A DNA stretch of 64,000 nucleotides, from positions 49,910,001-49,974,000 of the forward strand of contig OZ320319.1 of the NCBI GenBank assembly GCA_976226885.1, given 5' to 3'. Positions 36,820 to 57,840 of the stretch are shown piece after piece (position 1 is the first letter of the stretch; each line of letters begins with the position of its first letter). The translations under genes and the position numbers were made by a program. This stretch comes from Iphione sp. A-MEVVRFRX5 (Eukaryota). A model generated the notes under the pieces. It was given only the letters and a program-made list of their open reading frames with translations, searched no databases and was not told where the DNA came from.

Positions 36820-37470
36820 CCCTCCTAAGAACCGAAAAAGATGTGTTGCCACTACACCAATTTCCCTTTTCGGGTGAACTGCCAAGTCAGAGGAGTCATG
36901 CTTTAGAATACAGGAAACTTATCAGATGAGGAGGTCACTCGCTTTTATGGAGCCTCCTTTACCTTACATACCAGTGATTACATTGTTGGGCATACTGTTA
37001 AGTCATGTCTTAAAATCCAGGAAAGTTATCATATGAGGAGGTTGCTCGCTTTTATGGAGCTTCCTTTACCTTACATACCAGTGATACATCATCTATATAG
37101 TGAGAGAGTAAAATACAAGGAGTTTTAATCTCGCTCGCTTTTATGGAGCGATTACTAATGATACCAATAATAATTGTATTTAGTAATTGATCAACCACCA
37201 AGATACATCTAGATAAGACAACAGTTTTCTTATATGCATTTCTGAGCCTTTTACCTGTTTTGGACACTGTTTTGTCTAGTATTGAGCCGTATATGTTTAC
37301 ATGTTTACAAGGTTACCTACAAAGCATTATATAGAGGGTCTAACTACCATAATAATCATGTTCCCATCCGTTTCTTAGAGTCAATCGGAATTATGCATCT
37401 TAATGTCTTTAGAAAAAGTCACCAGAGGCCAGGCTTTTGGTGGATCCAGCATGAGTGGGACCAAAGAAAT

Positions 37471-40094: not shown

Positions 40095-40256
40095 GCTGAC
40101 CTGGAATGATATGGTTTAGTTCTTAGGTGAGAATCCTGATTTGATCCGTTTATGTTTTATAATACGTTTTAGAGATTATATTAAAACCAGCCCTCCTGGG
40201 TGATGGGAGAGAAATTATTCTACCACTGAATAACAAGAAGAGTACAAGTGTTGTTT

Positions 40257-42434
40257 TCAAGGCTTTATTATGTCACACTCCAGGCCGAAGAGTGATCTAG
40301 CAAGGGCTTCCTCCATAGCCTGCTGCGCTGCCCGCAAGTTACGTAAGTGCCCGACGTGGTGGCGTTGGGCACGTAGTGCGAGCACGCACAAATAGTTCCA
40401 CTGTTTGTGGTCACCAGCTGGGATGGGTGGGTGATACCCATTCTCCAAAAATTGGACTAACCAGCCCCGGACGCTTTCTGTTGTATTGGGCTGAGTCAGC
40501 CTTAGAGAAAGCGATGTACTCACCCGGGGGGTAAGGTCCAATATGGAGTCCATGAGGAGTGTGGGTGCCGTGGACCAGTTTTGCAGCATGTGGTGCTGCT
40601 GTGTGCCGTCAGGTGCGTGACCCGACCCGAACTGGATGTGGGGTTGGCTTCTGAGTGGCACGCAGGGCTGGTCGTTGGTATGTTGTGTGAGACACCGCAC
40701 ACATATCTTGCGGCGCTCCAGTTCCTTCTGTAGGTGGTTGAGGAAGGCCGCCTCTACCTCTTTAGCTTTATAGGGCCGGTCGGGGTAGTGTGAGCGGAAA
40801 ATGCGCGCATGCTCCTTACCTCGGAGAGTGTCGAGTCCCGGGAGATAATTTGTAATCTCGTGACCCGGTTGCCACATGAGGAGGGGGTGGGAGTTTTGAT
40901 GGGGGGGTTGTGCGGGTGGAGGGAGAAGGGGGAGGTTATTCCTGGGGATTCGACCAAGTCGCGGGATATTTAGGGTCCTGTTAAGGTGTTTCCGACTAGT
41001 ATGGGGGGTGTGGTGGTTTTCTAGCTGTGGGAGTTCATCTTCAGAGGAGGGGGGGTTATCAGTTTTGTTCAGGGCCGCTGGTTGGTCTTCATCAGATTCT
41101 GATGCTAGGGGAGTGCGTCGGTGGCGCCTAGCGGGGGCTGTGGTCTCGTCGTCCGAGTCACTGGCGGGTGCTGGACGGCGGCGGCTGGGGAGGGTCGGTC
41201 GTGTGTCTGTGGCAGGGCTGTGAGGGTGGAGAGGAGTGTCAGCCCTAGGGCTGTTCGCCTCCTTCTCCTGGGTGTCAGGGATGATCGGGGTGTCCAGTTG
41301 GAGCCGGTAGGGGTCCTGATCAGTGGAGGTGGAGGGCTGGGGGGAGAGGGGGCAAGTGGTGAGGGCATTGAGAAGGGCTTCTGAGGGTAGGAAGGAGGAT
41401 GGATCAGCCGTGGAGGTGGAGGGTTGAGGGGAGAGAGGGTGAGTGGTGAGGGCGTTGAGAAGGGCTTCCGACGGTAAGAAGTAGGACGGGTCGGCTGTGG
41501 AGGTGGAGGGTTGAGGGGAGAGGGGGCGAGTGGTGGGGGTATTGAGAGGAGCTTCCGAAGGTAGGAAGGAGGACAGGTCGGCTGTGGAGGTGGAGGGTTG
41601 AGGGGAGAGGGGGCAAGTGGTGAGGGCATTGAGAAGGGCTTCCGACGGTAAGAAGGAGGACGGGTCGGCTGTGGAGGTGGAGGGTTGAGGGGAGAGGGGG
41701 CGAGAGGTGGGGGTATTGAGAGGAGCTTCCGAAGGTAGGAATGAGGACAGGTCAGCTGTGGAGGTGGAGGGTTGAGGGGAGAGGGGGCGAGAGGTGGGGG
41801 TATTGAGAGGAGCTTCTGAAGGTAGGAAGGAGGAAAATGGATTCACATTGGATGTGGATGGGTGGGAGGAATGAGTGAGGGGGGAGGAGCCAGATGCATC
41901 TGCGGGAGACGAGAAGGCTAGACCCACTTTGGGTGCATCATTTTGGGGGATGAGGGTATTAGTGGGGGCTGTGGGGAGAGGGTTGGTGGTTAATGGGCTT
42001 GCTGGTAGGGAGGGGGGGTTTGTGGGGACTGCTGGAGACGTGGAATTCTGGGGGAGGGGGGAGGCTCGGCCAATAGTGGTGGTTGTGCCTGGTTGGGGGG
42101 GAGCAGGGTTGGTAGTGTTATTGGGACCTTTGTGTGTCAGGGGAGGGAAAGAGGATGGAGTAGCTGTTGGTTTGCTCAGCTTAGGAGAGGGGGGGTGTGT
42201 TTGGCCAGCAGTGATGGAGGGTTCTGAGGGGGGGGTGGAAGATGGGTCCGGTTGGGTGGGGGGTATAGGAGTAGGGGTCATTGTGGGATCCGAGTTGTGA
42301 TTTGTCACCCTCTCCATTAGCCTGACCATGTCGCGCATGAGGCCCACAAATGCTGTGCCGGAGCTGGTGAAAGCGTTTCTGACCGCCTTCTCAGCCTCGG
42401 TGAGGAGGGCTTCGGATAGTGTGCGGCCGGCCAT
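40257..42434 (-). CDS. 725-aa accessory protein: Pro/Ser/Thr-rich, 6 x 29-aa repeats, C-terminal CxxC-x3-H-x5-C module
   Basis: Intact ORF with an AG acceptor 2 nt before the ATG; CVRCLTQHTNDQPC. Confidence 0.75.
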   Translation of the reverse strand: MAGRTLSEALLTEAEKAVRNAFTSSGTAFVGLMRDMVRLMERVTNHNSDPTMTPTPIPPTQPDPSSTPPSEPSITAGQTHPPSPKLSKPTATPSSFPPLTHKGPNNTTNPAPPQPGTTTTIGRASPLPQNSTSPAVPTNPPSLPASPLTTNPLPTAPTNTLIPQNDAPKVGLAFSSPADASGSSPLTHSSHPSTSNVNPFSSFLPSEAPLNTPTSRPLSPQPSTSTADLSSFLPSEAPLNTPTSRPLSPQPSTSTADPSSFLPSEALLNALTTCPLSPQPSTSTADLSSFLPSEAPLNTPTTRPLSPQPSTSTADPSYFLPSEALLNALTTHPLSPQPSTSTADPSSFLPSEALLNALTTCPLSPQPSTSTDQDPYRLQLDTPIIPDTQEKEANSPRADTPLHPHSPATDTRPTLPSRRRPAPASDSDDETTAPARRHRRTPLASESDEDQPAALNKTDNPPSSEDELPQLENHHTPHTSRKHLNRTLNIPRLGRIPRNNLPLLPPPAQPPHQNSHPLLMWQPGHEITNYLPGLDTLRGKEHARIFRSHYPDRPYKAKEVEAAFLNHLQKELERRKICVRCLTQHTNDQPCVPLRSQPHIQFGSGHAPDGTQQHHMLQNWSTAPTLLMDSILDLTPRVSTSLSLRLTQPNTTESVRGWLVQFLENGYHPPIPAGDHKQWNYLCVLALRAQRHHVGHLRNLRAAQQAMEEALARSLFGLECDIIKP
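41323..41840 (-). repeat. Coding tandem repeat, 6 x 87 bp (SFLPSEAPLNTPTSRPLSPQPSTSTADLS)
   Basis: GTGGAGGTGGAGGG recurs at 41323, 41410, 41497, 41584, 41671 and 41758. Confidence 0.95.
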
Positions 42435-44009
42435 GACTGAATGCTGTGCAGTGTGGCTGGAATGGTATGTAATGTGCTTATCATGAAAAAGGTATTGCAG
42501 TACAGTGTCTGTTGTCTTTGTGACCTGAGGAGGGCTTCGTGGTGTTTGATTGTAATGGTTATAATATCGTACAGATGCAGTTATCCTATGAACTTTTTTA
42601 TAAACGTTGTGAGTAATTTGAAGTCCATTTATATTGATGGGAAAGGATCTAATAAGGTGCCAAATTTATAGGGGGGGGAACATAACAGGACATTTTAAAT
42701 GGGAGGGATTGAGAAAGATACAGAATGTAATGGGGAAAAATATAATGGTACTGCTTCTCAAATGGGGAGGGTTTGCAGGAAGGGGCAGAATTGAGGGACA
42801 CTGAAGGGCTACTTTTAAGGTGGAAAGAGTGTAAAAAGGTACTGAATTCAATGGGGGAGGGTGTGAAATGGACAGCAATTCGATGGAGAGAGATGTGGAA
42901 TGTGCAGAATTCAATGGAAAAAGACATCAAAATAATACTTGGAATGGGGGGTGCAAATTAAATGGGGATAAGGTGAAGCTTAGGGGCACTTACTAGTTTG
43001 TTCTGAGGAAGAAATCTGTGATGTGAAGATGTACAGGCTGAATATCCTTTCTGATATATTTTGTCCTGCCTTTTTCCTCTCTTTGAGATAAAAAGTGCCT
43101 GGTGGGGGGAAGGCTAATGTGGTGTCCAAGGTGTAGGCCTAGGTAGAAGTGGGGCTGGGACAGTATAGATGGTGACTTTTATATGAAACATGTGAGCAGT
43201 GGTTGTATTGAGGTCTTTATTATCTCTTTGTAACATATTGTACGCATTGATTAGCATGCTTTTATGTGAAACGTTTTGGGTCTTAGAATCTCTGACTTTT
43301 AACAAAGCTGCTGTTCTTGTTTGGTACCCTTTTATGTGAAAACGTTGGGTCTTTGTAAATGTAACTGACTCTTATTCCTAACACAGATGCTCACGCCATC
43401 CTGTTGACTACTATTGTTCACTTAACCGTCATGTTTTCGGCTGTGTGCACTCCTGCCACCTCGTCTCGTTCGTAGTCTGAACAAAAGACACTGTGTTCGC
43501 GCTAGGCAACATGTTTCCTGGCCACTCGCCACATTGTTTCGTCTATAATTCTGACAAAAGACGACGTGTTTGCGCTAAGCGCCACGTTTTTCGGGCGTAC
43601 ATACGTACGCGTGGCTTCATGTTTTTGGTTATTTCATACCATACAGCATTAATTGTTAGGGTTTTTGTCAATTTTTGATTCGACGACAACAGCTTTACGG
43701 CCGTACGCACGAACATACGTACGCGCAGCATCATGTCGACTTCAATCCAAGAATTATGCTTACTTTGTCTCTTTATTCGTCCAAAAACCCTTAGTTTCGA
43801 TTCATCTAAGGGACTTATCCCTTAGTTTCATACCAAAAAGCATTAATTCAGGGTTTTTGTCTATAATTTCGACTCGACAACGCCACAATTCGACCTTATC
43901 CTGGTACCCTTTCCTCGATTTCGTACGAACTTAAGGTATGGGAACCAGAACGAATGTTACTTCCGGTTTGCGGCGTAGTTGTCGAGCATCGATGTTCTTC
44001 CTGAATATA

Positions 44010-44600
44010 ATCAGATTTTAAGAAAAAGCCCAGGCAGTTTCGGCCGAAAACTCAGGTGAATTCGTCAAAACCCAGGTATAATCATCCGAAAATCCGGGAA
44101 ACTCAGGTGAGTTCGTCCGAAAAGCATCAAAACTGAGGTAATTTCGTCTGAAAATCCGGGGAAACTGAGGTATTTTGTGTGAACATTTGCGAAACTGAGG
44201 TAATTTTGATTGAGTTTTGACCAAACTGAGACATTTTTGTGTGAAATTTGGAAAACTTGGGTAAATTTGTGTGAGAATTGCCAAAATCTAGGGGTTTTTG
44301 TGTGAGTTATGACAAAACTTGGGTAAATTTGTGTGAAATATTGCAAAATCTATGGGTTTTTGTGTGAGTTATGACAAAATCTGGGTAAATTGTATGAATT
44401 TTGACAGAAACTTATGGGTTTTTGTATGAGTTTTGATGAAATCTGGGTAAATTTGTATGAAATTTTGGCAAAATGTATGGGTTTTGTATGAGTTTTTGAA
44501 GAATCAGGGTAAATTGGTATAAAATTTGGCAAAAACTTATGGGTTTTTGTACGAGTTTACCGGCAAAGTGTGGGTAAATTTGTATGAGATTTGGCCAAAT
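44010..44600. repeat. Degenerate non-coding minisatellite, about 25-31-bp units
   Basis: AAAACTCAGGTGAATTCGTC-type units grade into alternating AAAACTTGGGTAAATTTGTGTGA and AAAATCTATGGGTTTTTGTGTGAG units. Confidence 0.8.
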
Positions 44601-44838
44601 TCGGGGACCTTGGTGGATACGAATACTTTTAGTTGAATAAAGACGTCTTTTGCTGATTAGGAATGTTTTTAATAACCCTGAGCATAGACATATGACAGAA
44701 AGAGGAGAGGATTCTTTTGCAATTATGCTATGAAAATGTCCTTTTGTAGTAGAATATTTATGACTCTCTATGAGAGGGATGAACGCCACTGTCTGTTTGT
44801 TCCTTATTCTTAGTGTTTGTGCATATATACATATATTT

Positions 44839-45375
44839 TCAGTCCTTGTCCTTTTGGTGGCGTGGTGAACGTGGAATCCCCGCTGCAATGATGTTCATTT
44901 CTGGGGTATGAGAGGAGTAGCAAGATGTGTAGGTGAGTACTCCCTTCATTGCCACTGCCTTATGACGGTCAGCAGAGGGGGATATGATTGGGATGTGCTG
45001 GTAACTGTGTAGTGTCACCATGACAAGGGTGTCCCATGCGGGCAGGAAGTGTGTTGGGAGGTTTGGCTCCTTACGGGTGTGAAAATAGTTTGTAACCAGT
45101 TGTATCACCCCTAGTTGTACAAGGGTGCAGTTTAGGTTAAAGAACCGCCCCTCCTGCCAAGTGGGTAGGATGACTCCCATGTGAGTGTCAGTTAGTCGTG
45201 CCAGTCTGTCTAGCATCCAGAATCTTTCCAAGGGGGTTATGTCAGGGTGCCGGATCCCTGTTTTCTGGCCAAATAATACGCTAATGAGGGCGGGATCACA
45301 GTCTGCAAGGGTAGGCTTGTCTCCTTACAGAATGGATTGGGCCCTTCTTGTAGCTCCGGTGTAACGTCCCATCAT
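44839..45375 (-). CDS. Accessory paralog 4 (178 codons, in-frame TAA at 45325-45327)
   Basis: MMGRYTG...SIL*GDKPTLADCDP...GIRHPDITPLERF...PAWD; same length as paralog 3 and colinear with it. Confidence 0.75.
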
Positions 45376-45759
45376 GACCTGGAGTAAGAGTGATTTAGAG
45401 AATAACAACTCCTTGCTTAGGGAATTCTGGGTGTGGAGGGTGGATGGGTGGGGAGTGGCCTGAAGACCAGTGCGGTCATAAGGTGTGTGGATTCTAAACC
45501 AAAGCATCATAGGGGGGTGGGTGCATGGGCCTAGGCGGAGGGGGTTGGCAGAGGGTCGGGGCACCTAGGGGGTTTTTACGTCAGTTTTTGATGACCATTA
45601 GGGTTGGCCTGTGTAAGGTGTTGTGTGAATCCTGGGTAGGTTTTTGGCAAAACTCAGTAGAGACATTAACTGTTGGTAGATTTGTGGTTTGTGAATAATT
45701 TTATCGTCACTTCTGTAGAATGTCAGTCATATGTTGAGATAATAAATAATGTCCGGTAT

Positions 45760-46296
45760 CTAATCCCAGATTTCTAGGTCTGGTGGTGTGATGGGTCTAC
45801 CCGCCGTTAGGAGGTTACTGTGTAGCAGTGTGGGCGTGTAGCAGTGCACGTATGCACGTACTGCTTGTATGGCCGCCTCTCTGTGGGGCTTCCAGTTGTA
45901 GGGGCCGATTGGCCAGCGCTGAAAGTGGTTCAGCATGACCATTACAAGGGCATCCCAGGCAGGTAGAAAATGTTCTGGTAGGTTCGGCTCCCTTTGTGTC
46001 TGACAGTATGTTACCAATAGTTGAACCAGGCTTATCTGCACAAGGGGAGAGTCCAGATTGAAGAATTGGTTTCCCTGATAGCCGGGAAGGACGATTCCCG
46101 TGTAGGTATCTGTTGTGTAAGCCAGCCTGTTGAGCATAAGGAATCGTTCCAGGGGCGTGATATCAGGGTGGCGGAGGCCTGTTCTCTGTCCAAAAAGTGC
46201 ATTGACGAGGACCGGTTCGCAATCCACAAGGCTCGGTTTAATGCCCTGTAGTACAGCTTAGGCTCTCGTGGTGGTTCTAACGTAGCGACCAGTCAT
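45760..46296 (-). CDS. Accessory paralog 3 (178 codons, in-frame TAA at 46258-46260)
   Basis: MTGRYVRTTTRA*AVLQGIKPSLVDCEP...GLRHPDITPLERF...PAWD...REAA. Confidence 0.78.
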
Positions 46297-46454
46297 GTCC
46301 TGAAGTAGATATTTGAGAGTCATATTAAACTTCTGTGGGTGGTGTCTAAGGTCTAGAGGAATGATGGGTGGAGGGGGGGGGGGTTTGAGAATTGAGGATG
46401 GGATTTCAGGGAATCTTGTTACCTATGTTACTGGCATATGCTGAGGGTTCCTCT

Positions 46455-47009
46455 CTAAGGGATGTTTGTGGTTGTATCCCATTCATTGTCATCATAGGTG
46501 GGTGTTGGGGGGTACAGGCCCGCGTATAAGAGGTTGTGGTTAACCATGTGTGTAGCTGAAGTTTTTTGCATATATGCGCACAACCCTTTTACTGCAGCCT
46601 CCCGCACGTGGTCTGTGGCCTGTGATAGTCGGGATGTCATCCGCAGGGCTCTGAAGGCCTCTACGGCTAACTGGTCCCATACTGGACAGAGGTGTGCTGG
46701 GAGAAGTGGTTCTTGTGCAGTCCTGAGGTAACGGGCGAGGACCCGTACGATAGATAGCTGCACCAAGAGTGAGCCTAGGTTTAGGAGTGTTCGTTTCCAG
46801 GGGAGAACAACTGCCCCAAGGGAGTCAATACGGCTCGCAAGGTGTTGCAGTAGCTCATAGCGCCGAAAGGGTGTGACCCTAGGATGACGTAGGCCCCTAT
46901 CAGGCTGGTAGAGACCCAGGGTCAGACGTGATATGCAGTCCTCGATCTCAGGCATTGCTCCATCTTGAAGTTCCCGAAGTCGGGTGGATACTTCGTCATA
47001 AGTATTCAT
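46455..47009 (-). CDS. Accessory paralog 2 (184 aa)
   Basis: DRGLRHPRVT...PVWD...REAAVKGL. Confidence 0.82.
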   Translation of the reverse strand: MNTYDEVSTRLRELQDGAMPEIEDCISRLTLGLYQPDRGLRHPRVTPFRRYELLQHLASRIDSLGAVVLPWKRTLLNLGSLLVQLSIVRVLARYLRTAQEPLLPAHLCPVWDQLAVEAFRALRMTSRLSQATDHVREAAVKGLCAYMQKTSATHMVNHNLLYAGLYPPTPTYDDNEWDTTTNIP

Positions 47010-48932
47010 TTTCTGCAGAGGAAGGGTAGAGATCTTATATCTGGCATGGTGGATGAGAGTTTAGGGGGGTAGCTATCCATGGGCGGGGGTTAATTAGTTG
47101 CTACCGAGGTTCTCTCTCCAAGGAGATCAGGGGTGGGGGTCTTTTTATACTTCTGATATTACTCGGTAGGTTAAGGTCATAAGGAAGCTTTTTGGTGTGG
47201 GTGTTTGGGGTCATTAGTGGCCAGCCTTAACCCAGGGATCGGGGTTGTTTAGATGAGGTCATTTGTTTACATGATAACAGCTGTGGTCTGGCAAAAGGGT
47301 GTTGGAGGAAAAGACGTGGCCGGAATGCACGCGTGTCTTTGGCCGCGGGTGATTGAGTTGATCATTTGAGAAGGGGCAGCAAGAGAGGGCAGTCTAGCAA
47401 GGTCACAAAGGAGAAAAAGGATTATGGACAAAGGACCAAGTTGTTGGGAATTAGTGACTGCCATGATGGCGGCATTGGTGCTTGGCATGCATAGGAACGT
47501 AATCAAGGAGGATATTCCTTTGGAGGGTAAGTTTTACTTTTTTCACCCAGGTAACTTTTTCTGAGAAGGGGGGAAGGATGAGGGGCCCTGCTACGCTCTG
47601 TCAGGCCAATGGGTAGTGGGAAGTGAGGTGGGGGCTGCCACTTTTACTTTGGTGATAGTTGTTATTAATGCTGCCTTGCTAATTCATCCCCTATTACTTT
47701 TTGCAGAAGTTGTGGTGATCCCGAATGCTGGGAGCGGGATTTGTAGGCAGCGTGTAACCAGCGAGGTGCCAGATAGGACAGACCGAGAGGCTGCCTGATC
47801 TCTGGGCCGTATCGGATGTGTGTGATCCCGGTGGTTTTGTAGTAGCCTAGTTTTGGGATGCTTTCTCAATATTAATAGTGTGCCGTATGGAGAATAAATA
47901 TTTTTTGTAAACCTGTGTCTCTTTTTTTGTTTTTTGTTTTTGTTTGAGTTGCCGCTATGAAACAGGAGTTATTAGATCGTATTGCCGAGGTTCTATAATT
48001 TTCTTCCTTAAGATGTGTACCATTCATAGAAAGTCAAGAGTCTTCTTGATGCCAATAGTTTATTACCATAAAGCCCATTAATAACTCTTCTACATTTGTT
48101 TATATTTGACTACAGTATGATTTTGGTTATTCAAATGTCTACGTAGAGGTATATCGGATCCTGCCACCATAAATGTTTATAAGTGTTATACGTTGAGTAC
48201 TTTGATAATACACATAGAATTGCATATATGTTGATAATATTTCCAAAGAGAGTAGCCATGCTCCTACTTTTACAGTGTCCTTCAGTCTCGCATTATTGGT
48301 ATGGAGACATCTGACATCACTATCGGAGGAACTTCACTGCCTTGACTCCGACCATGTGGCTACCTTCTGGGAGAAGGGCTGTGTTGGTAAGTGTCGCCCC
48401 ATCTTGCGGTGGGGTGTTCGCGTCGGGTCACAGATGGTGGCCAGGTGTCTCCTTTCGCACGGAGTGACTCCCGATTGGGCTAGTGTTTCTAACCACATAA
48501 TGAGTCCTTTCACCATTTACTAATTCTACAGTCACTACAATGTTTTTCTTGGGTGGTCTTGTTGTCCAGGGGCGTTCCAGGCTTGTCAGTGAGAGCTCAT
48601 TCAGGACTCTGTGCTACGTGGAGATTCAAATTCCCATTCCTGTTCCACGGGGACGGGTAGGACGGGGCGTTTGGATCTGATGGCCTCAGTTGATGAGAGC
48701 CTGGCGGCCGGAGAGTCGACTGCCAGTAGAACGGGGTGTTTGCACCTGACGATGTCGGTTGATGGGCGTTTGGCGTCCTGAGAGTTGGGGACCAGTCGGG
48801 TGGGGCTCTGGTATGTTGTTCCGGTGCGCTGGGTGGGTTTGCGTTTCCTGTGCCATCTGGGAGTGTGAGAGCGACGACTGGGAGTTTGGTGAGTCCCAAC
48901 TTCTCGGGAGACGGTATTGCGGCGTTTGGGCG

Positions 48933-49652
48933 TCAAAGATCAGTCTGAGCAGGGACTGGATTCTCCTCTGGAACGGGTTGGTGAGGCGGCTCGTGAACGG
49001 GTAGGCCTGGCGGGACGGGGGGGGTGATATCCCGGGAGGATGAGATATCCCTCTGGGGTGAGCCATCCCCGCGGGGTGAAGTATCCCGTCGGGGCGAGAT
49101 ATTCCCGCGAGATGGGGTATCTTGGCGGCGTGGGTAGTGCGCCTTGGGGGATCGGTACAGGTTGGCTGCCAAAATGTCCATGCGTGCAGGTATATGGGAG
49201 GTCCTCTTCATGTATTTCCCGAGGGCTCTCACGGCTGCTTCTCTGGCCTGACTCGTGGCCAGAGAGAGCCCGACAGTGGATCGGAACTCTGCAAGGGCCA
49301 CTGTCACTAGACTGTCCCAAGCGGGGTAGTACTTGGGCAGCATAGGAGGTGTCTGATGGTCCTTGAAGTAGGCCATGAGCATGTCGTCCACCGTAAGCTG
49401 GGCCATTGGGTATTCTAGGTCGTAGAAGTTGCCTTTCCAAGGGTGAAGCACTGCGCCCGTTGCTTCTACGGTGTAGGAAAGGTGCCACATGAGCTCGTGT
49501 CGATACCCGTCTGTGACTCTGGGGTGGCGGAGCCCTCTGTCGGACTTGAAGAGCTCGGGGGTAAAGGCCGGCATGCAGTCTCCTGGGATCGGCAGCGCCC
49601 CTTGGAGAAGGAGTGACTGCTGCTCTCGGATTTTCACATACCGGCCTGCCAT
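48933..49652 (-). CDS. Accessory paralog 1 (239 aa, with an R/S/P-rich tail)
   Basis: MAGRY...DRGLRHPRVT...PAWD...REAAVRAL, followed by ISPR/TSPR repeats. Confidence 0.82.
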   Translation of the reverse strand: MAGRYVKIREQQSLLLQGALPIPGDCMPAFTPELFKSDRGLRHPRVTDGYRHELMWHLSYTVEATGAVLHPWKGNFYDLEYPMAQLTVDDMLMAYFKDHQTPPMLPKYYPAWDSLVTVALAEFRSTVGLSLATSQAREAAVRALGKYMKRTSHIPARMDILAANLYRSPKAHYPRRQDTPSRGNISPRRDTSPRGDGSPQRDISSSRDITPPVPPGLPVHEPPHQPVPEENPVPAQTDL

Positions 49653-50339
49653 AACCTGCGAATGTTGAGATAGAGAGAGATGTGAGAGATCTCTTCAACT
49701 ATTCGTAGGATTTTGAGAAGGGCCATACTACAAAAGATAGAGAGGGGTGCATGTTTTGCTAATCCCAGGTTCTCATGGGTGGGGTTTCTTGTGACGCCCA
49801 GTATTTCTATTGGGGGTTTCGTATCTCTAGGGGGGGTTCAAGCCACCAAGATGAAAGCTCCCAAATGGAGGTTTCTACAAAGGGAGTGCCTTTTGGGAGA
49901 AGGGTGAGCTACTAACTCTATGGGTGAGGTGAGAATCAGACTGGATTAGTGCAGGGCAAGACGAGTCTTGGATGGCGGCCCCTTTATTTTGAAGCCCTGT
50001 CGGCAAGCCTTAGGAGTTATGCTGGGGATCTTTTGTGGTGAGTGTTTGTGTTGATTGCAGGTGTGAGGTCAGATACTGCAAACTACCTTGGGGGTCTGTG
50101 TATAAGCCTCCTATTGACTCCTCACTCAGGGCAGAGGTAGCTAATCTCTGCTACTGTCTTTGAGTCATGTACCTTTTTCGCTTGGAGGTAGGGGAGTAAC
50201 CAGATTTGAGAAAAGGCAAATTACTAGGCACTGTACATGTGGGTTGGCTTCTTTCTGGTAGCCTCTTTTTCCTATTTTCCTTCATGAAGAAGGGCTTTAT
50301 TGATGAGTGTGGACTCCTTCATCCAATTCTAAATTCTTT

Positions 50340-50675
50340 AACGGGGGAAATAAAAGATACTTCCCCTTCCTACCTACGTGAAGGTAGGGCGGCACGCCTG
50401 GGTGTACGATACGTCGATGCTTCCTTATTACGTTTGAGGGTTTGCGATTGCTTACTTTACCTGCTTTAATTGGAAGGGAATCCTTCAGTACGGGGGAGAT
50501 AAGAGTGGCCTCCCCTTCCTACCTGTGTGAAGGTAGGGCAGCATGCTGAGGTTTGTGATATCTTTCGGAGCAGGATTCTACCATTTTGTCCCTTGGAAGG
50601 ACTCCCTTCATGAACGGGGGAGATGAGGATTGTCTCCCCTTCCTACCTACGTGGAGGTAGGGTGGCATGCCAGGA
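50340..50675 (-). repeat. Three dispersed direct repeats, each with a conserved 7-bp hairpin
   Basis: CCCCTTCCTACCT-N6-AGGTAGGG at about 50363, 50512 and 50636. Confidence 0.85.
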
Positions 50676-51026
50676 GGTACTATATCTCATAGTCCTGTTT
50701 ACCTCATTTTACTTCCTTACTTTAAGCTGCGTACATGTGCATGTGGACGTCCATTCATATGTTCGTATAACTTTTAGATTCCTCTTCTTATTCTTGTTCA
50801 ACATTGTGGGCTTTTTGCCTGTACTCCTGCATTATAATCAAGGGGAGGGGTCATAATGGCTCTGATGGGAGCACATCTTCCCTGCAAGATCTTGCCTTTT
50901 TATCTGTTGTTTTTAGAATTACGCCTTTCTCTTAGAGGTGTTCCCACCTTGGTTCTTTGGAATAACATTACTTATAGGAAAAAAAGGGGGGTTGCTGAAG
51001 GGTCTGACAAGGGTTCTCTTGCCGTC

Positions 51027-54000
51027 TTAGGTTTTCTTCCCTTTGCGCCTTGTTTGCAGAAGAGACGTCCAGGTGGCAGCGTCCCACCACCGTTTCGGCC
51101 TCCTCTTAGTACGCTGTGGTCGGATTACCTTTTGGGGACATACTGGGGGTTGGTTGATGGTATTGGATTCCGAAGAGTTTGGATTAGGCCCGATGATGAC
51201 CTTAGTGTCTTTTCCAGGGTGATCTTGGTTGGCTTGTTCTATTATGATCTTGTCTGGGTTGGGAGGTAAGTTGAGGCGCTCCAGTCTCACAACAGGGTCA
51301 AGTTCACTTAGGCCCGCCTCTGTCTGACGTGGGCGTCGGGGGGCAATAGGGGGATGAACTTGTATCTTGAGGGGATGCCCGGGTCTTAGCTGCTGAAGGG
51401 GGTCATCCCCTATTTTATCAGAGAATGCATCTTGAGCTTTGCTTTGTGAGCGTGTTACGGGTCCCTCTGTTTGTGTTCTGGGGGTTTCTGGTATTACAGG
51501 CATGGAGAACTCTGAGGGGCCCTCAGATTCTTCTTCAGAAAGGGCAGGGGACTCACTGGAAGATTTAGAGTCTGAGAGCGGGGGAGAAGTGGGAGAATTG
51601 GACCGAGATGGAGCTGGGGTTTCAGGGTCTTCACTCGATACATCTTGGGTTGTTGGATGGCTTGCATTGTGGACTGATCTTATAATAGGGTGGGTACGTT
51701 CATGTAAACTTTGTGAGGTAGAGGGAGTCTCAAGGGGAGGACCCTCATTCTGAAAGGGGGATGAGGCATTTGAGGCAGGTGATATGTCATCTTCAGGGAA
51801 TTCCTCGTTGGTGCTAGGGATAGCAGATATAGTTTTCTTTAGCCTGCTGATGGTTACTGGTCTGGCCAGATGTCTTTTAGTTTGAAGGCATTTCAAAAAG
51901 ACAGTAGAGTCAGTCTGAAATCGGGTAATGGCATAAGGTCCATGGTAGACCTTGGCCAGTTTCAGTTTGAGTGAGCTGTCCTTTAATTTAGGCATGTATA
52001 CCCATACTACATCACCCACCTGGAGATCCGGCTTATAGGTGTGCTCATCATGTCTTGCCTTCATGGCTAGGGCATATTTCTCAGAAGTCTTTTGTGCAGC
52101 CTGATGAGCTTCTTGTTGGGCCTGCAGGTGGGCCCCGAATCTTTGTCGTGTGTCCATTAATTCATCTTCGGAAATGGGAATGGAGTTCATTTCGGGACGG
52201 CGGGGTTCATACCCGTTTAGGAGGAGATAGGGGGTCTGGCCTGTGCGGGTGGCCTTTGTGGTGTTTAGAGCAAAACATATTCCAGGGAGGTAACAATCCC
52301 AGTTGTTTTGGTCTTTGCTAACATAATTTCCCAAGACAGTCAGAAGCGAGCGGTTGGCCCGCTCGACCAAGCCTGAGGTCTGGGGATGACCTGCCGTAGC
52401 AAATTTCTGTTTGATTCCGTTTTTCCTACAATAATTCATAAATCTATCTGAGATGAAGGCTGAACCATTATCTGAGACTATAGTATTGACTACACCAAAA
52501 CGGTAAACAATATGTTCTTTAAATTTAGAAATAAGAGTATCTGCTCGGAGATCAACTTGTGCCCATGCTACTAGGAATCTGCTATAGTAGTCTACTATGG
52601 TAATGATATGTCGGTTTCCTCTCTTGGTGAGGGGGAGTCTTTCGATGGCATCCATATTAATGGTATGCCATGGTGCTGGCGTTGGATCTCTCAAGGTTAG
52701 AGGGGGTCTTATAGGGCGTGTCATACGTTTGGTTTCGGAACATTTGATACAAGTGGCGCAATACTCGTGCACATCTTTGCTCATTCCAGACCAAAAGAGT
52801 GACTCTCTCATTCTGGTAAGCATTTTTACTGGGCCCAGGTGTCCTGCATGTGGAGGGTCATGATTCTGTTGGAGAAATTGTTCCCTAAGTCCCATGGGGA
52901 CAATAAGTCTGACATTTGTTCTGGCATTAGGTCCAGTGGTTGATGACATTCTAAAGAGAAGCCTTTTATAAAGAAAATAGTCTTCTTCATGGAGCAGAAT
53001 TTCATGCGCCAGTTTGTCGTCCTTTGGGCGTATCCCATATTTGATGAATCCAACTGTCTGCTGACAGAAGGTATCATCTTTTTGCTCCTTAAGAAGATCT
53101 TCAATGGGTATGTGTGATGAGTTTAGATGTTTCTCTGCCCCAGAGTGAAGGACAAATTGTCTTTCTCTTCTCTTACGGTGCTTAGGTTTGTTAAGAAATT
53201 GGGGAGTCCCTGACTTACTGGTGGTATGAATAGCGTTTGCTTCTAAGGGCTTAAGCTTTTTATCTCTGGGTTTCCTGCTGGGAGGAGGACAGGGAGGCTC
53301 TTTGTCAGGAGGGGTGTCGAGCCGAGAGAGGGCATCGGGGACATAATTGGAGGTCCCTGCTACATGTTGGACAATGTAGTCAAACCGTTGGAGGAATTCC
53401 ATCCATCGGATAACTCGGCTCTCTTTATGCTCTAAGGATTTTGTAACTAAGATATGAACGAGAGGGTTATGGTCAGTTTGGATGGTGAACTTGGCTCCTT
53501 CTAAATAAACTTGCCAGTGCTTGACTGCGTAAAAGACAGCAGCCATTTCCTTGTCTGTCGTGGAGTAATTAAGCTGGGCTCCTTGAAAGGCTTTAGCCCA
53601 GTAGGCTATTGGTCTAAGATTTCCTTCCCAGTCTTTTTGTGACAAGCTGGCGCCCATTCCATAGTTACTGGCATCAGTGGCCAAAAAGAATTCATCATTA
53701 AAGTTTGGGTAAAGAAGAAACTGTTCATCGGTCAGGGCTTCCTTAAGTGTTTGGTATGCTTCCTCTTGTTCAGGTCCCCAGAAGAATTTTGTACTCTTTC
53801 TTGATAAGTCATAGAGGGGTTTGGCTTTAAGGCCATAGCTGGGGATAAATTTTCTATAATAGCCAGTCATTCCTAAGAATCGGCGTACCTGGCGGACTGT
53901 GGTTGGAGTATTCATTTCTTTTATTTTCTGAGTATTGTCAGGAGAGGGTTTAATGCCTTCAGTGGTTATAATGTGACCTAAGAACTTGACTTCTGAGTGC

Positions 54001-56213
54001 CCTATCTCACATTTATGAGGGTTTGAGTTTAAGTCCTGCCTCGATTAATTGGTCAAAGACTTCTCCAAGGTCCTGCATATGTTGCTCAAATGTGGGTGAA
54101 AAGACTACTATGTCATCCATATATGCCAAACAGATTTTATACTTTAATCCTGACAGAACTAAATCCACTACACTTTGAAAGGATGCTGGAGAATTTTTAA
54201 GACCCATAGGCATAGTTTTGTAGCGGTATTTTCCTGAAGGGGTGAGGAAGGCTGTTTTATCCCTGTCCTCATCACGAATAGGGATCTGATGGAAGCCCAT
54301 CTCTAAGTCCATTACAGAAAGAAATTTAGGTTTGGTGTGCCCGATTGCGTCTATAGTATCATCTACCCTGGGGATAGTAAACATCTGTGTGACCGTTTGT
54401 GTATTTAGATTTCTATAGTCAACTACTAATCTGAACTTTCCATTAGGTTTTGGCACTAGAAAGGCTGGGCTAGCCCATGGGCCGTCCCCTGCTCTTTCCA
54501 GTATATCTTTTTCTTCCTGATCTGCTACTATTTTGTCAAGTTCCTCCCTCATTCGGGGGGACATGCGGAAGGGTTGTGCCTGTGTTGGGAAGTGGTCTGG
54601 TTTTAATTCAATCCTATGCTCTACCAAGTGGGTTCTTCCTATGTCTCCCTGTAAGACGAATGCTTCTCTCTTGGATAAGAGGAGATTGTGACAAATTGCC
54701 TTTTGTTCATGGGTGAAATTGGAATTAGATAGGTCAACTGGTATATTCAAAGAATTGGTGTTGAGGGAATTTATTTGTGTCTGTGCAGGCATGATGTTTG
54801 TATAGGGGTTTCCCTTTGTAAAAGTTCCTACTCGAAATCCTTTCTTTAGCTGTTCTGGGCGGGAGGAGTAATTTAAAACAGAATAGGGATACGGTTGTCT
54901 ACAACCTTCACAATAGCTTCCTTATTGGTTCTAAGGTTTCGGGGGGTCGATGACAAGGTGTCCGTATACAGGCCTTCGTAGGGGTCTAGGGAATCCCCCT
55001 TCCCAAGGATCTGTCCCCATAAGAGGGTTTCTGTTCCAGGTTGAAGGAGTATATCCTCAGGAAGGGCGACAGAGTATTGGGTAGGGGTTTTAAGGCCAAA
55101 GGAGAGGTTCATGGAAAATTGATGCAAAAATGATCGACCTAGGATGATGTCATAGGAAAGTCCAGGAACCACGTGTAGGGAAACAGGGTAGGTACTATCA
55201 TCAATGGGGATGGGCAGGTGAACTGTCCAGGGAGATCGGGAGACTGTCCCATTAGCCATAACACATTCTGTTTTAGAGGGGGAAAGGCGTATGGGGGCCC
55301 CACCATCTTTTAACTGGTTAAGGGCTTTTAGGCTCATACAGCAACCTTCCGCTCCTGTGTCTACAAGGGCTGTGAACACAAGGCCTTCTATAGGGATTTT
55401 GGTAGTGCTATTGCCTGTCAATGAATGGCGAATCAACTCCCCATCACCAGTGGTAGTTTTACTCGTTCTAGATAAAAGGATCCCTTGGTTAGGTACATGC
55501 CGTGATTGGGCAACAATAGAAAAAATTTCTTTGGTTTTTGGAGGGAAGTTAAAGTCCATATAGAGCTGGTGATGTTCTATTTCTTCAGGGAGGATCCAAT
55601 GCTCAACATGCAGAGGACAGGCAGGCACCCTATTACATCTAGGTTTAAGTGTTTCTCTATTGACTTCCCTACTCCAGTATGAGACCTGTCTTGTTACACA
55701 TGCTTCTAAGGTTCCACAGTTTGGAACATCACAGGTACCATTCTGGTGTTCTAATATTCTCCAATGTAACAATGTAAGTACATGATATTCTAAACTATTA
55801 ATACATAAATTATCAACAATTGCACAATCACATTTCATTTGGATAGATAAATCAGGCTTAAGCTCAGAAATGCATATACATCGGTTAGGACAATGAGTAC
55901 AATCAAAACGTATACCTCTATGACCATTGTGGACTTCTACCATATGGTCCACAGTCTTAGCTTGAGTCTTTTTCTGGGAGGGCTTCCCTGGGCAGAGAGG
56001 ATGTGATTTCAGCGTTGTATATACAAGGTTCTTAACCCAACCCAAGTTTTCCTCGGGTAGACGAGGGTAAGGTTTAGATAAGATTATACACAAAAATTTC
56101 TTCCCCGGTTCAGGTGAACTGGAGTCCTTAAGGTTTACATTGGTCCCTTCGTCTGTCCGGGATGTCAGTGACTCCCAATACTTGGGTGATTTGGGAGTCT
56201 GGTCTAGTTTCCC
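51027..56213 (-). CDS. pol: Gypsy B pol (Cys/His-rich domain, protease, RT, RNase H, integrase); 1-bp frameshifts at about 54875 and 54020
   Basis: LVDTGAE; WASPAFLV...YMDDIVV; LATDASNYG...DALSR; HHCC; DAIE/SDNG/ERANR; GPY. Confidence 0.95.
56170..56213 (-). promoter_or_regulatory. -1 programmed ribosomal frameshift signal (G_GGA_AAC, 7-nt spacer, 9-bp hairpin)
   Basis: The in-frame heptamer (56207-56213) lies directly before the gag TAG. Stem GACTCCCAA/TTGGGAGTC. The -1 frame is open into ORF 54873-56093. Confidence 0.85.
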
Positions 56214-57795
56214 AGGTGGGGGAAATTGGCCCCACTGTAGCGATCATGGTCCCCACGGGTCCGTTCTATGGGGCGGTTTCTGGGGGCGCCTCTATCTTCC
56301 CATGGCTGCGGGGGAAGACGTCTCAGTGGTTGAGGAGAGGCGGACCGGTAGGGCTGGGATTGAGGGCCCCTATTACGAGGAGGGTGATACTTTTGCTGAG
56401 TGTTTTGGGGATATTGGGGCCTTCTCCCCCGTGGTCCTCTCCCTCTTTCAGAGCGTTGTGGAGGAGGGCGGGCACGTTCTTCCATGTCCCGTCTCTTGGT
56501 GCGACATTCCCTAGCATAGTGTCCCCTTTTCTGGCAATAATAGCATGTTAGGTTGGACTCAGGAGGTAAAGGATCTGAGACTGGTTGGGTTATGTTGGGA
56601 GGGGGACGGGTGGTACCCCCAATTGTTCTCAAGGTGACTGCTGCTATCTCACTGGGGAGTTCTTTCATTAGTTCCCTTTTAAGGGCATCTACTACTGCCT
56701 CCATTTTTGAGATCCTTTTACGAAACCCTCCCTGGGCATGCCATGCTTCTCTGGCATCCTGGACTGCCTTATCAAAAAGGGGACTGTCCGCACCTTCATA
56801 GATTCCCTTAATTCTGGGAGTATATTTTCCATAAAAATTCTTCCTGCCAGCTCATCACTATCATGTCCTGCAGCTACACAAACTTTCATGAGCCTATCTG
56901 CAAACTCAGAGGGATGTTCATCTGGTCTCTGCTTAGTGGCACGAAGCCTATCACCCAGTTCTATTGGGGGCGGTCCCTTTTGTTCTATCAAGAATTTCCT
57001 TAGCTCATCCCAAGTGGGGTGAGCCTCTATATAAAGGTGGGCAGTACGGGGGAGGAAGGCTCGAGCCTTTCGGTAGCAATATTCTTTCCAGCCATCCCGT
57101 GCTGCTCCACCCTGTCCTCCCTCTTGAGGATTAGGATTCTCTTCCCCATAGATGTCCTTAATGTAGTCTTCATACTGGTGTACCCAGTCTACTACTTGAT
57201 AGGGGTCAGAGGGGAACATACCTGGTCGTTTAGGCATAATAGTCAGTCTTTTAGCAAATGCTTCAATCATACCCTCATCTGCCATGTTTCTTAATGCACG
57301 TTGCCCTTCCCTGACATTTATAAGGTTACCACTTACTGGTTGTTGAGTCGGGTAGGATGGTGTAGGCTGGGGTGTACGCGTTGGCGGCTGTCGTGATGGG
57401 CCTGGTTGGGGCTGATGGAGCTCTAGTGACTGTCTGGAGGTAGAAGGATGTGGCTCTGGTAGAAGTAGAGTCCTATGTGGGCCTGGTTGAAGGACCGATG
57501 ATGGTGCCCGGGGTGTTGTAGTGGCTGGAGATGAAGGGGATGTTGGGCCTTGTTGTGGAAGACTAGGAGGAGTGGACCACGCTGTGGGCGAAGTTGACCG
57601 TCCTGGTGGCGAGAAGGATGGACGTCGCTGGCTTGGAGTGACTGGTAGTTGCAGGGGCGTCCGAGGAAGGCTGGTTGAAGATTTACCAGATGAGATGCGC
57701 CCTCTTTCTTGAGACCTGCCTTGTCGGGTGGCACTGGAGGTGAGCCTGTGCTTGGCAGTGAGACTTCTCGTGGTAGGTCGGGAGATATGAGCCAT
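56204..57795 (-). CDS. gag: Gypsy B gag (P/S-rich N-terminus, capsid, CCHC); 1-bp frameshift at about 56775
   Basis: LRATKQRPDEHPSEFADRL is capsid-like; CYYCQKRGHYAREC zinc knuckle. Confidence 0.9.
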
Positions 57796-57823
57796 GCACT
57801 AGTACTGCCAGGTGGTGAAGTTA

Positions 57824-57839
57824 CCCGGGTTCTCCACCA
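57824..57839 (-). promoter_or_regulatory. Primer-binding site, tRNA-Ala-like
   Basis: TGGTGGAGAACCCGGG starts 1 nt after the 5' LTR; the first 10 nt are complementary to a tRNA-Ala 3' end (UUCUCCACCA). Confidence 0.6.
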
Positions 57840-57840
57840 G

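What the first reader, a model, noticed from the sequence alone, without database searches (positions are those of the whole stretch)
44839..49652. Family of four tandem paralogous accessory genes of unknown fold in an LTR retroelement
Seen: four ORFs of 178-239 codons share M-x-GRY (three of four), DC, G(L/I)RHPx(V/I)T, R-x-x-(L/M)-x-x-x-L, G-x-(V/I)-L, P-x-LP, P(A/V)WD-x-L and REAA-like blocks. Paralogs 3 and 4 are both 537 nt, and each has one TAA at a position that is Gln in a sister copy. DNA divergence is high, so the expansion is old and was retained. I recognise no known domain. Inference: a diversified antagonist family (for example against piRNA or innate restriction factors), analogous to Vif/Vpr/Vpx-type expansions. 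This is the best candidate here for an undescribed system.
Basis: partly seen in the sequence, partly recalled or inferred. Interest (0 to 1): 0.9.

Follow-up and report, generated by a model that had tools for sequence, protein, structure and literature searches.

The report
Accessory gene array in giant retroelement
A dead 23-kb retrovirus-like element in an animal genome carries, between its polymerase and envelope genes, four old duplicated genes for a small helical protein with no known relatives, which look like accessory genes of the kind known mainly from complex vertebrate retroviruses.

Summary
Four minus-strand ORFs (239, 184, 178 and 178 codons; 44839-49652) are true paralogues (pairwise BLASTP E 2e-34 to 9e-41). 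Two are intact and two carry one internal stop each.

They lie inside one 23,336-bp LTR element (35613-58948, minus strand). It has 96%-identical LTRs, a 4-bp target duplication, gag with a CCHC knuckle, PR-RT-RNaseH-IN, and a baculovirus-F-type env. This is an env-carrying Ty3/gypsy (errantivirus-like) provirus with about 11 kb between pol and env.

Synonymous sites between the paralogues are saturated, while replacement sites are conserved. The duplications therefore far predate this insertion and evolved under protein-level constraint.

Each paralogue start codon sits exactly 3 nt after a pyrimidine tract plus CAG. A fifth ORF and env have the same arrangement. I read these as splice acceptors for alternatively spliced subgenomic mRNAs; no transcript data confirm this.

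No relative was found: Pfam and PDB gave nothing, and a profile search of 1.84 billion proteins gave one marginal hit. Structure models are of low confidence (mostly helical) and match no fold.

The "host-defence antagonist" reading is untested. This copy is decayed. Verdict: real, an orphan accessory-gene array in a complex invertebrate-type retroelement. It is a new variant of a known kind, and its function is unknown.

The parts
35613..58948 (-). Whole LTR retroelement (23,336 bp; internal region 21,021 bp)
   Evidence: LTR pair 96.2% identical. Ends read. GC skew is positive over almost all of 36-59 kb.
57841..58948 (-). 5' LTR (1,108 bp), with 24-25-nt tandem repeats, a TATA-like box and AATAAA at 57929-57934
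35613..36819 (-). 3' LTR (1,207 bp; more copies of the 24-nt repeat than the 5' LTR), AATAAA at 35701-35706
58949..58952 (-). Target-site duplication AGAT, upstream copy
35609..35612 (-). Target-site duplication AGAT, downstream copy
57822..57839 (-). Primer-binding site (starts TGG one base after the 5' LTR). It overlaps a donor-like site CGG|GTAACT whose last exon base is 57825, upstream of the gag ATG.
   Evidence: The tRNA was not identified (no tRNA gene in the window). Donor use is inferred.
36820..36826 (-). Polypurine tract abutting the 3' LTR
51027..57795 (-). gag-pol (broken): gag, CCHC zinc knuckle, aspartic protease, RT, RNase H, integrase, plus a long C-terminal tail. It is split over five ORF pieces in three frames, which makes four frame changes; at most one could be a programmed gag/pol shift. 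Against uninterrupted relatives there are 1-2 frame switches and 0-1 stop within PR-IN.
   Evidence: Pfam hits; counts
50334..50684 (-). Three copies of a ~78-nt unit, each predicted to form two adjacent 7-bp hairpins in the sense RNA. It lies between pol and the first paralogue.
   Evidence: 3 pairs with compensatory change among the copies; no Rfam match
48933..49652 (-). Paralogue P1, 239 codons, intact. Core of ~170 residues plus a Ser/Pro/Arg/Asp-rich repetitive tail. CAG at 49656-49658, 3 nt before the ATG.
46455..47009 (-). Paralogue P2, 184 codons, intact. CAG at 47013-47015, 3 nt before the ATG.
45760..46296 (-). Paralogue P3, 178 codons, one internal stop, no frameshift. CAG at 46300-46302, 3 nt before the ATG.
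44839..45375 (-). Paralogue P4, 178 codons, one internal stop, no frameshift. CAG at 45379-45381, 3 nt before the ATG.
44085..44615 (.). 31/62-nt tandem-repeat array just 3' of P4. The adjoining 43300-44100 has the opposite GC skew and may be a later nested insertion.
40257..42434 (-). ORF725, a fifth accessory ORF, intact. It has a Pro/Ser/Thr-rich region with 5.9 copies of an 87-nt repeat and an acceptor-like CAG 2 nt before the ATG. Its C-terminal end resembles the paralogue profile weakly, so it may be a very diverged fifth member.
   Evidence: hhalign E 1.5e-3, probability 17%; 2 of 2000 shuffles reach its score; no homologues
37471..40094 (-). env region (broken). The N-terminal part has a signal peptide, a basic cleavage site followed by a hydrophobic peptide, and a Baculo_F match. 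The hydrophobic anchor segments lie in another frame. An acceptor-like YAG sits 1-6 nt before the ATG.
   Evidence: Pfam PF12259, E 6e-10, 38.7 bits against a cut-off of 24.1. Assigning the 3' part to env is inferred.

Best explanation
The four ORFs are an old tandem array of accessory genes belonging to a giant, env-carrying Ty3/gypsy (errantivirus-like) endogenous retrovirus. They occupy the interval between pol and env.

Proposed working:
1. The 5' LTR drives one long genomic RNA.
2. A splice donor in the untranslated leader (candidate just upstream of the gag ATG) is joined alternatively to one of six acceptors.
3. Each acceptor lies 1-6 nt before the start codon of P1, P2, P3, P4, ORF725 or env.
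4. All mRNAs end at the 3' LTR poly(A) signal, and each translates the first long ORF after its junction.

The paralogue products are soluble, mostly alpha-helical domains of roughly 160 residues, with no signal peptide or membrane segment. They act in trans for the element. Diversification into four (perhaps five) versions is most simply explained by each version binding a different or fast-changing partner. Host restriction or silencing factors are the leading guess. Control of the element's own RNA splicing or export is the second.

Shown here: paralogy, position inside the element, protein-level purifying selection, conservation of the acceptor-like motif, and orphan status.

Inferred: splicing, expression and every statement about function.

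This particular copy is dead.
For: - Paralogy.
- One insertion unit: LTRs 96.2% identical, identical 4-bp flanks AGAT, PBS and PPT in place.
- Retroelement identity: CCHC, protease, RVT_1, RNase H, integrase and Baculo_F above Pfam cut-offs.
- The paralogues share the coding strand and the C>G bias of gag-pol-env, unlike other genes in the window.
- No direct or inverted repeats flank the array, so nothing marks it as a nested transposon.
- Age and constraint: pS 0.69-0.81 against pN 0.34-0.52. Codon-position identity is 0.44-0.67 at positions 1 and 2 and 0.29-0.43 at position 3. LTR divergence is only 3.8%.
- Acceptors: all four starts have pyrimidine tract-CAG-NNN-ATG. In the 100 nt upstream, almost nothing else is conserved. 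CAGNNNATG occurs at 2.8% of ATGs on this strand. A pyrimidine-rich YAG 1-3 nt upstream occurs at 7.8% of ATGs but at 6 of 6 post-pol ORF starts.
- A donor-like site lies in the leader before the gag ATG.
- No minus-strand AATAAA follows P2, P3 or P4 before the next gene.
- Precedent: env mRNAs of such elements are spliced from a donor near the start of gag to an acceptor just before env (PMC4402516). Cer1 encodes a novel regulator on a spliced mRNA (PMC10309623).
Against: - There are no transcript data, so splicing is a sequence-pattern inference. 31% of ATGs on this strand have some YAG within 8 nt upstream.
- The four acceptor motifs are not independent, because the genes are duplicates.
- A TATA-like box lies about 120 nt upstream of P2, and internal promoters for env are known in Tor elements (PMC4402516).
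- Only one decayed copy was examined.
- A profile search of 1.84 billion representative proteins gave one marginal hit. Conservation outside this copy is therefore unshown, and the array could be a lineage-specific capture from an unsampled host gene.
- The structure models are of low confidence (pLDDT 49 and 53).
- Nothing bears directly on function.
Confidence: 0.6

Rival explanations
1. Captured cargo. A host gene (or small host gene family) was transduced into the element and is carried along without serving the element's life cycle.
For: [quoted passage not shown] The paralogues are somewhat more C-rich and less A-rich than pol. Host TE-poor gene sets of the unknown host may be missing from the databases searched.
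Against: No cellular homologue was found among 1.84 billion representatives or in the 5.8-billion-cluster collection. Four copies diverged to synonymous saturation while staying in one element, on one strand, each keeping an acceptor-like motif directly before its ATG. Passive cargo in a reverse-transcribed genome would be expected to be lost or to decay.
Confidence: 0.12
2. Same genes, different expression. Each paralogue is transcribed from its own internal promoter rather than by alternative splicing of the LTR transcript.
For: There is a TATA-like box about 120 nt upstream of the P2 ATG. Spacers of 0.4-1.9 kb lie between the genes. Some Tor elements have an internal promoter for env (PMC4402516), and that paper also notes internal promoters for some accessory genes of complex retroviruses.
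Against: The only feature conserved upstream of all four starts, apart from a short C-run further upstream, is the pyrimidine tract plus CAG 3 nt before the ATG. No shared promoter-like block is seen. No poly(A) signal follows P2, P3 or P4.
Confidence: 0.2
3. The array belongs to another mobile element that inserted into the provirus after integration. It is not part of the retroelement.
For: The internal region is unusually long (21 kb). At least one stretch (43300-44100) has the opposite strand composition, and AT-rich and tandem-repeat stretches lie in the spacers.
Against: The array has the strand and C>G bias of the element. No terminal direct or inverted repeats flank it. No transposase or other TE signature is found in it. 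ORF725 and env downstream share the same start-codon context.
Confidence: 0.06
4. Same genes, different role. The paralogues are regulators of the element's own RNA (splicing balance, nuclear export or packaging of the unspliced genome), acting on the triple double-hairpin element. They would not be antagonists of host defence.
For: An element with six alternative acceptors must protect unspliced RNA. Cer1 needs a novel spliced-mRNA-encoded phosphoprotein for export of its genomic RNA (PMC10309623). Three structured hairpin units lie in the segment removed from every proposed subgenomic mRNA. P1 has a Ser/Pro/Arg/Asp-rich repetitive tail, and both intact copies are basic to neutral (pI 7.8-9.2).
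Against: One regulator would suffice, and four or five diverged copies are not explained. No RNA-binding domain is detected. The hairpins have no Rfam match and only three copies to judge covariation from.
Confidence: 0.2
5. Not genes at all: chance ORFs in a stop-poor, C-rich strand, or decayed duplicates of non-coding sequence.
For: The strand is stop-poor. A 252-codon ORF overlaps P1 in another frame. Two of the four copies carry stops.
Against: Significant protein-level similarity with saturated third positions and conserved first and second positions cannot arise without selection on the protein.
Confidence: 0.02

Closest known systems
Env-carrying Ty3/gypsy elements of metazoans ('errantiviruses', F-type env; Chary & Hayashi, eLife 2026, PMC13524379)
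   Same: LTRs, short target duplication, PBS and PPT; gag, PR-RT-RNaseH-IN in Ty3/gypsy order; a baculovirus/paramyxovirus F-type envelope gene 3' of pol.
   Different: Those elements are described as three-ORF GAG-POL-ENV units. The survey accepted at most 1,000 nt between POL and ENV and at most 10 kb overall, so an element like this one could not have been picked up. Here about 10.9 kb and five extra ORFs lie between pol and env, and the element is 23.3 kb. The nearest pol proteins found are only 42-43% identical.
Accessory genes of complex vertebrate retroviruses
   Same: Small ORFs 3' of pol, each directly preceded by an acceptor-like site. They are duplicated and diverged within the viral genome and have no enzymatic signature.
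   Different: No sequence or fold likeness came back from Pfam, PDB or the viral structure library. The carrier is a Ty3/gypsy element, not a member of Retroviridae. There are four (perhaps five) members rather than two. Splicing and any host target are unshown.
CERV of the C. elegans Ty3/gypsy element Cer1 (PMC10309623)
   Same: A novel protein with no known relatives, encoded by an LTR retrotransposon and expressed from a spliced mRNA. It shows that invertebrate Ty3/gypsy elements can have retrovirus-like regulatory genes.
   Different: CERV is a single gene with a shown role in genomic RNA export. Here there is a paralogous array of unknown role. No comparison of sequences was possible, because no tool returned CERV as a hit.
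LTR retrotransposons with captured extra ORFs (bdelloid rotifers, PMC5408684) and giant LTR elements such as Burro, Ogre and fish foamy-like ERVs (PMC6431247)
   Same: Extra coding capacity beyond gag-pol(-env). The internal region exceeds the 20-kb 'giant' threshold used in PMC6431247.
   Different: The rotifer ORF3s and the Burro extras have recognisable domains (GDSL esterase, DEDDy exonuclease, dUTPase, BCL-2-like, MATH and others), and in Burro they are mostly fused into one polyprotein. Here the extras are separate cistrons, orphan in sequence, and tandemly duplicated.

Membership tests
Env-carrying Ty3/gypsy LTR retroelement (errantivirus-like, Metaviridae) | Two LTRs flanked by a short target-site duplication, with a PBS after the 5' LTR and a PPT before the 3' LTR | tested here: met
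   LTRs 96.2% identical. AGAT on both flanks, TGG-starting PBS and purine tract. The primer tRNA was not identified.
Env-carrying Ty3/gypsy LTR retroelement (errantivirus-like, Metaviridae) | gag plus pol with domain order PR-RT-RNaseH-IN | tested here: met
   zf-CCHC, gag-asp_proteas/RVP, RVT_1, RT_RNaseH, Integrase_H2C2 and rve, all above Pfam cut-offs and in that order on the minus strand
Env-carrying Ty3/gypsy LTR retroelement (errantivirus-like, Metaviridae) | Class I fusion glycoprotein gene of F type 3' of pol | tested here: met
   PF12259 Baculo_F, 38.7 bits against a cut-off of 24.1. Signal peptide and basic cleavage site followed by a hydrophobic peptide. The gene is broken in this copy.
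Env-carrying Ty3/gypsy LTR retroelement (errantivirus-like, Metaviridae) | Compact three-ORF layout (pol-env gap at most ~1 kb and unit at most 10 kb, as operationally defined in PMC13524379) | tested here: not met
   About 10.9 kb and five ORFs lie between the pol stop (51027) and the env ATG (40094). The element is 23.3 kb.
Lentiviral accessory proteins Vif / Vpr / Vpx | Sequence membership in the Pfam families of those proteins | tested here: not met
   No Pfam family at E <= 0.01, and nothing related at E <= 10 for any paralogue
Lentiviral accessory proteins Vif / Vpr / Vpx | Shared fold | tested here: inconclusive
   Models have pLDDT 49-53. Best Foldseek E is 0.42 against PDB and 0.57 against viral models, and no retroviral accessory protein is among the top 50 hits listed for either library.
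Lentiviral accessory proteins Vif / Vpr / Vpx | Expression from spliced subgenomic mRNA using an acceptor just upstream of the ORF | tested here: inconclusive
   The acceptor-like motif is conserved before all four ATGs. No transcript evidence is available.
Lentiviral accessory proteins Vif / Vpr / Vpx | Binding and neutralising a host restriction factor | not testable with these tools
   No functional data
Transduced cellular gene | Detectable homologues encoded outside retroelements | tested here: not met
   One marginal hit in 1.84 billion representatives: P0001, 133 aa, E 3e-4, a 41-column motif-level match on metagenome contigs under 1.6 kb. The word-seeded search gave none. Caveat: the host genome may not be in the collections.
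RhoGAP domain (weak Pfam lead for P2 only) | Score above the Pfam gathering threshold, shared by the paralogues | tested here: not met
   13.1 bits against a cut-off of 24.5, E 0.087, one paralogue only. No RhoGAP chain appears in PDB sequence searches with the profile, P1 or P2.
Retroelement Gag/capsid-derived duplicate | Similarity to the element's own gag | tested here: not met
   hhalign of the paralogue profile against gag: E 0.54, probability 0.1%

The most novel reading that the evidence does not exclude
A lineage of invertebrate Ty3/gypsy endogenous retroviruses independently evolved the 'complex retrovirus' plan. That plan comprises a multiply spliced genome with five accessory cistrons, a structured RNA element confined to the unspliced genome, and a tandemly diversified, structurally new protein family whose members each neutralise a different host defence component (for example parts of the piRNA or another silencing pathway).
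Probability: 0.2. Interest if true: 0.85.

Novelty: new variant of a known kind. Interest (0 to 1): 0.6.

Why it matters
Accessory-gene programmes are a hallmark of complex vertebrate retroviruses. Env-carrying Ty3/gypsy elements of invertebrates are described as simple gag-pol-env units, and the largest survey used size and gap filters that would exclude an element like this one.

A retained, anciently duplicated accessory family with its own splice acceptors would show that retroviral "complexity" arose more than once. It would add a protein family with no known relatives. It would also give a handle on which host pathways such elements have to deal with. In addition, it argues for re-scanning animal genomes without a pol-env distance limit.

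Tried and rejected
- Pfam for all four paralogues, ORF725 and the ORFs 3' of env, at E <= 0.01 and E <= 10: nothing coherent.
- Weak RhoGAP hit of P2: below cut-off, one copy only, not echoed in PDB searches. Rejected.
- PDB sequence searches with the profile, P1 and P2: nothing meaningful.
- Word-seeded search of 5.8 billion clusters with P2 and with the ORF725 C-terminus: no hits.
- Profile search of 1.84 billion representatives: one marginal hit, P0001. It has two copies of a ~40-residue motif, sits on tiny metagenome contigs, scores hhalign probability 52%, and has no DNA-level counterpart in the window. I treat it as unproven.
- Two AlphaFold runs on the four-sequence alignment: pLDDT 49 and 53. 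They agree only on a mostly helical secondary structure. Foldseek against PDB and BFVD: no match.
- Paralogues derived from gag: rejected.
- Extra copies elsewhere in the window, including the other TEs: none.
- Nested-transposon origin: no flanking repeats.
- Rfam over the element: no family.
- tRNA genes to identify the primer: none.
- Host identity: not established. Named pol relatives come from scattered invertebrates, fish and plants at 45% identity or less.

Full report
**What is there**

On the minus strand, the ORF listing shows intact ORFs of 239 codons (P1, 48933-49652) and 184 codons (P2, 46455-47009). It also shows two further 537-nt reading frames: P3 at 45760-46296 and P4 at 44839-45375. 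Each of these two is interrupted by a single internal stop and by no frameshift.

The four are clearly homologous. BLASTP gives E 2e-34 for P1-P2, 3e-25 for P2-P3 and 9e-41 for P3-P4, at 30-51% identity, with 16 invariant alignment columns. tblastn against the whole window finds these four and no more. The window has no N runs, and I saw nothing human-like in it.

**Context**

The array lies inside one LTR retroelement on the minus strand, 35613-58948 (23,336 bp).
- The LTRs are 57841-58948 and 35613-36819. They are 96.2% identical over about 1,050 bp and differ in the copy number of a 24-25-nt tandem repeat.
- Both LTRs start with TG.
- The same four bases, AGAT, flank the element on both sides.
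- A TGG-starting primer-binding site follows the 5' LTR after one base.
- A purine tract abuts the 3' LTR.

The whole 23-kb unit, array included, therefore integrated as one piece.

Pfam identifies a CCHC knuckle, an aspartic protease, RVT_1, RNase H, the integrase zinc-binding and core domains, and a Baculo_F (F-type fusion glycoprotein) gene near the 3' end. That makes the element an env-carrying Ty3/gypsy element, the group that Chary & Hayashi call errantiviruses and find across Metazoa (PMC13524379).

The nearest pol proteins in the 5.8-billion-cluster collection are only 42-43% identical. Named hits are scattered over invertebrates, fish and plants. The other content of the window is a Maverick/Polinton-like element, piggyBac pieces and another RT fragment, which fits an animal genome.

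**State of this copy**

- gag-pol is split over five ORF pieces in three frames. That is four frame changes, of which at most one could be a programmed shift.
- Aligned against three uninterrupted pol relatives, the PR-IN part shows 1-2 frame switches and 0-1 stop.
- The open N-terminal part of env has a signal peptide, a basic cleavage site and the Baculo_F match. The hydrophobic anchor segments are in another frame. I infer at least one frame change and one stop, but this is not confirmed by homology.
- P3 and P4 have one stop each. P1, P2 and ORF725 are open.

With 3.8% LTR divergence, this is an old, dead provirus. The stops in P3 and P4 are most simply part of that decay.

**Are the paralogues part of the element, and were they functional?**

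- They share the strand and the C-over-G bias that runs from LTR to LTR. Other genes in the window are C-poor.
- No direct or inverted repeats bracket the array.
- Between paralogues, synonymous differences are saturated (pS 0.69-0.81) while non-synonymous ones are lower (pN 0.34-0.52).
- Identity is 0.44-0.67 at codon positions 1 and 2, against 0.29-0.43 at position 3. These figures were computed on the uninterrupted pieces only.

The duplications are therefore vastly older than this insertion. The array passed through many replication cycles under selection on the proteins. That is the strongest argument that these are working genes of the element lineage, not chance ORFs or recent cargo.

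**Expression model**

In the 100 nt upstream of the four start codons, almost nothing aligns except a pyrimidine-rich tract, CAG, three bases and ATG. CAGNNNATG occurs at only 2.8% of ATGs on this strand of the element (10 of 358, four of them these).

ORF725 and env also have a YAG 1-6 nt before their ATG. A pyrimidine-rich YAG 1-3 nt upstream is seen at 7.8% of all ATGs but at six of six post-pol ORF starts.

A donor-like site (7 of 9 consensus positions) lies in the leader, after the PBS start and before the gag ATG. A second lies 36 codons into gag, but it would put the paralogue ATGs out of frame with the gag ATG.

No minus-strand AATAAA follows P2, P3 or P4 before the next gene. Both LTRs have one.

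This is the arrangement by which env of such elements is known to be made: donor near the start of gag, acceptor just before env (PMC4402516). It is also how Cer1 makes its regulator CERV (PMC10309623). I therefore propose six alternatively spliced, 3'-co-terminal mRNAs.

Because each paralogue ORF lies wholly within one exon and the leader exon is non-coding, no exon joining was needed, and none was done. Splicing remains an inference. Internal promoters are the main rival; there is a TATA-like box about 120 nt before P2, and Tor elements set a precedent.

**What the proteins are**

- They have no signal peptide or clear membrane segment, and pI is 7.8-9.2.
- Two AlphaFold runs on the four-sequence alignment agree on five to seven helices in matching positions, but confidence is low (pLDDT 49 and 53).
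- Foldseek found nothing (best E 0.42 against PDB and 0.57 against BFVD).
- Pfam, PDB sequence searches and a word-seeded search found nothing.
- A full HMMER profile scan of 1.84 billion representatives gave a single marginal hit. P0001 is 133 aa, scores E 3e-4, and has two copies of a ~40-residue motif. It sits on metagenome contigs under 1.6 kb.
- P1 carries a Ser/Pro/Arg/Asp-rich repetitive tail.
- ORF725 starts with the same first residues as three of the paralogues. Its C-terminal ~55 residues score weakly against the paralogue profile (hhalign E 1.5e-3, probability 17%; 2 of 2000 shuffles reach its HMM score). It may be a fifth, very diverged member fused to a mucin-like repeat region. 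It too has no homologues.

**Function**

Nothing tests it.
- Best-supported statement: the paralogues are trans-acting accessory proteins of the element.
- Leading guess: diversified binders of host factors (restriction or silencing). Four or five diverged versions are hard to explain otherwise.
- Second guess: control of the element's own RNA. Supporting points are three structured double-hairpin units that lie in the segment removed from all proposed subgenomic mRNAs and the CERV precedent.

**Comparison and novelty**

- The published survey required at most 1 kb between POL and ENV and at most 10 kb overall (PMC13524379, methods), so it could not have found such elements.
- Extra ORFs in LTR elements are known from rotifers, Burro and fish foamy-like ERVs (PMC5408684, PMC6431247). 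Those have recognisable domains or are fused into polyproteins.
- With a 21-kb internal region, this element passes the 20-kb "giant" threshold of PMC6431247.
- A tandem array of orphan paralogous cistrons, each with its own acceptor-like site, is in my judgement a new variant of a known kind.

I did not fetch DNA around the nearest pol relatives (P0002, P0003) or around P0001. As a result, conservation of the array outside this copy is untested.

1. While weighing the weak RhoGAP hit, I recalled a short motif of that domain from memory in my reasoning.
2. My first notebook entry lists the bounds of the gag-pol ORF pieces as the ORF tool printed them, and these bracket the breaks. I left it as written.
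3. Tool calls on P3 and P4 necessarily referred to their uninterrupted pieces.

Noticed in passing
window 50334-50411, 50483-50560, 50607-50684 (minus strand sense): Three copies of a ~78-nt unit between pol and the first paralogue. Each is predicted to form two adjacent 7-bp hairpins, and three pairs show compensatory changes among the copies. There is no Rfam match. It lies in the part that would be intronic in every proposed subgenomic mRNA, so it is a candidate cis element of the unspliced genomic RNA.
   Followed up: partly
window 36314-36758 and 58542-58890 (both LTRs): Arrays of 14-18 tandem copies of a 24-25-nt unit with a palindromic core. Copy number differs between the two LTRs. This may be a binding-site or enhancer array.
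   Followed up: no
window 40257-42434 (minus): An intact 725-codon ORF between the paralogues and env, with 5.9 copies of an 87-nt (29-residue, Pro/Ser/Thr-rich) repeat. It has no homologues. Its C-terminus weakly resembles the paralogue profile, and it has the same first residues as three paralogues.
   Followed up: partly
window 43300-44615: A stretch with opposite GC skew (43300-44100), followed by a 31/62-nt tandem-repeat array (44085-44615) directly 3' of P4. This may be a later nested insertion or satellite inside the provirus.
   Followed up: no
window 47900-48330 (minus): An AT-rich stretch with an A-rich run and the only minus-strand AATAAA inside the array, in the long P1-P2 spacer. 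It may be a small nested insertion, which would explain why this spacer is much longer than the others.
   Followed up: no
window ~11400-22050 (minus): A Maverick/Polinton-like element: a family-B-DNA-polymerase-like ORF (17552-20437), an integrase-like ORF (14049-15239), a packaging-ATPase-like ORF (16146-16781), capsid-like and protease-like ORFs, and an adjacent C2H2 zinc-finger ORF (20707-22047). Apart from the zinc finger, the assignments come from reading the translations, not from a domain search.
   Followed up: no
window 32220-34194 (+) and 29240-29809 (+): Two pieces of a piggyBac-type transposase (DDE_Tnp_1_7) in separate ORFs, and a separate reverse-transcriptase fragment. These are further decayed mobile elements.
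   Followed up: no
window 51027-53915 (minus), C-terminal ~400 residues of the last pol ORF: A long, low-complexity, Pro/Ser-rich extension after the integrase core with no domain match. It is unusually long for a Ty3/gypsy integrase tail.
   Followed up: no
window 57947-57958 (minus), leader: Two upstream ATGs open a very short ORF that ends at the stop overlapping the LTR poly(A) signal. No long upstream ORF precedes the candidate leader donor.
   Followed up: no
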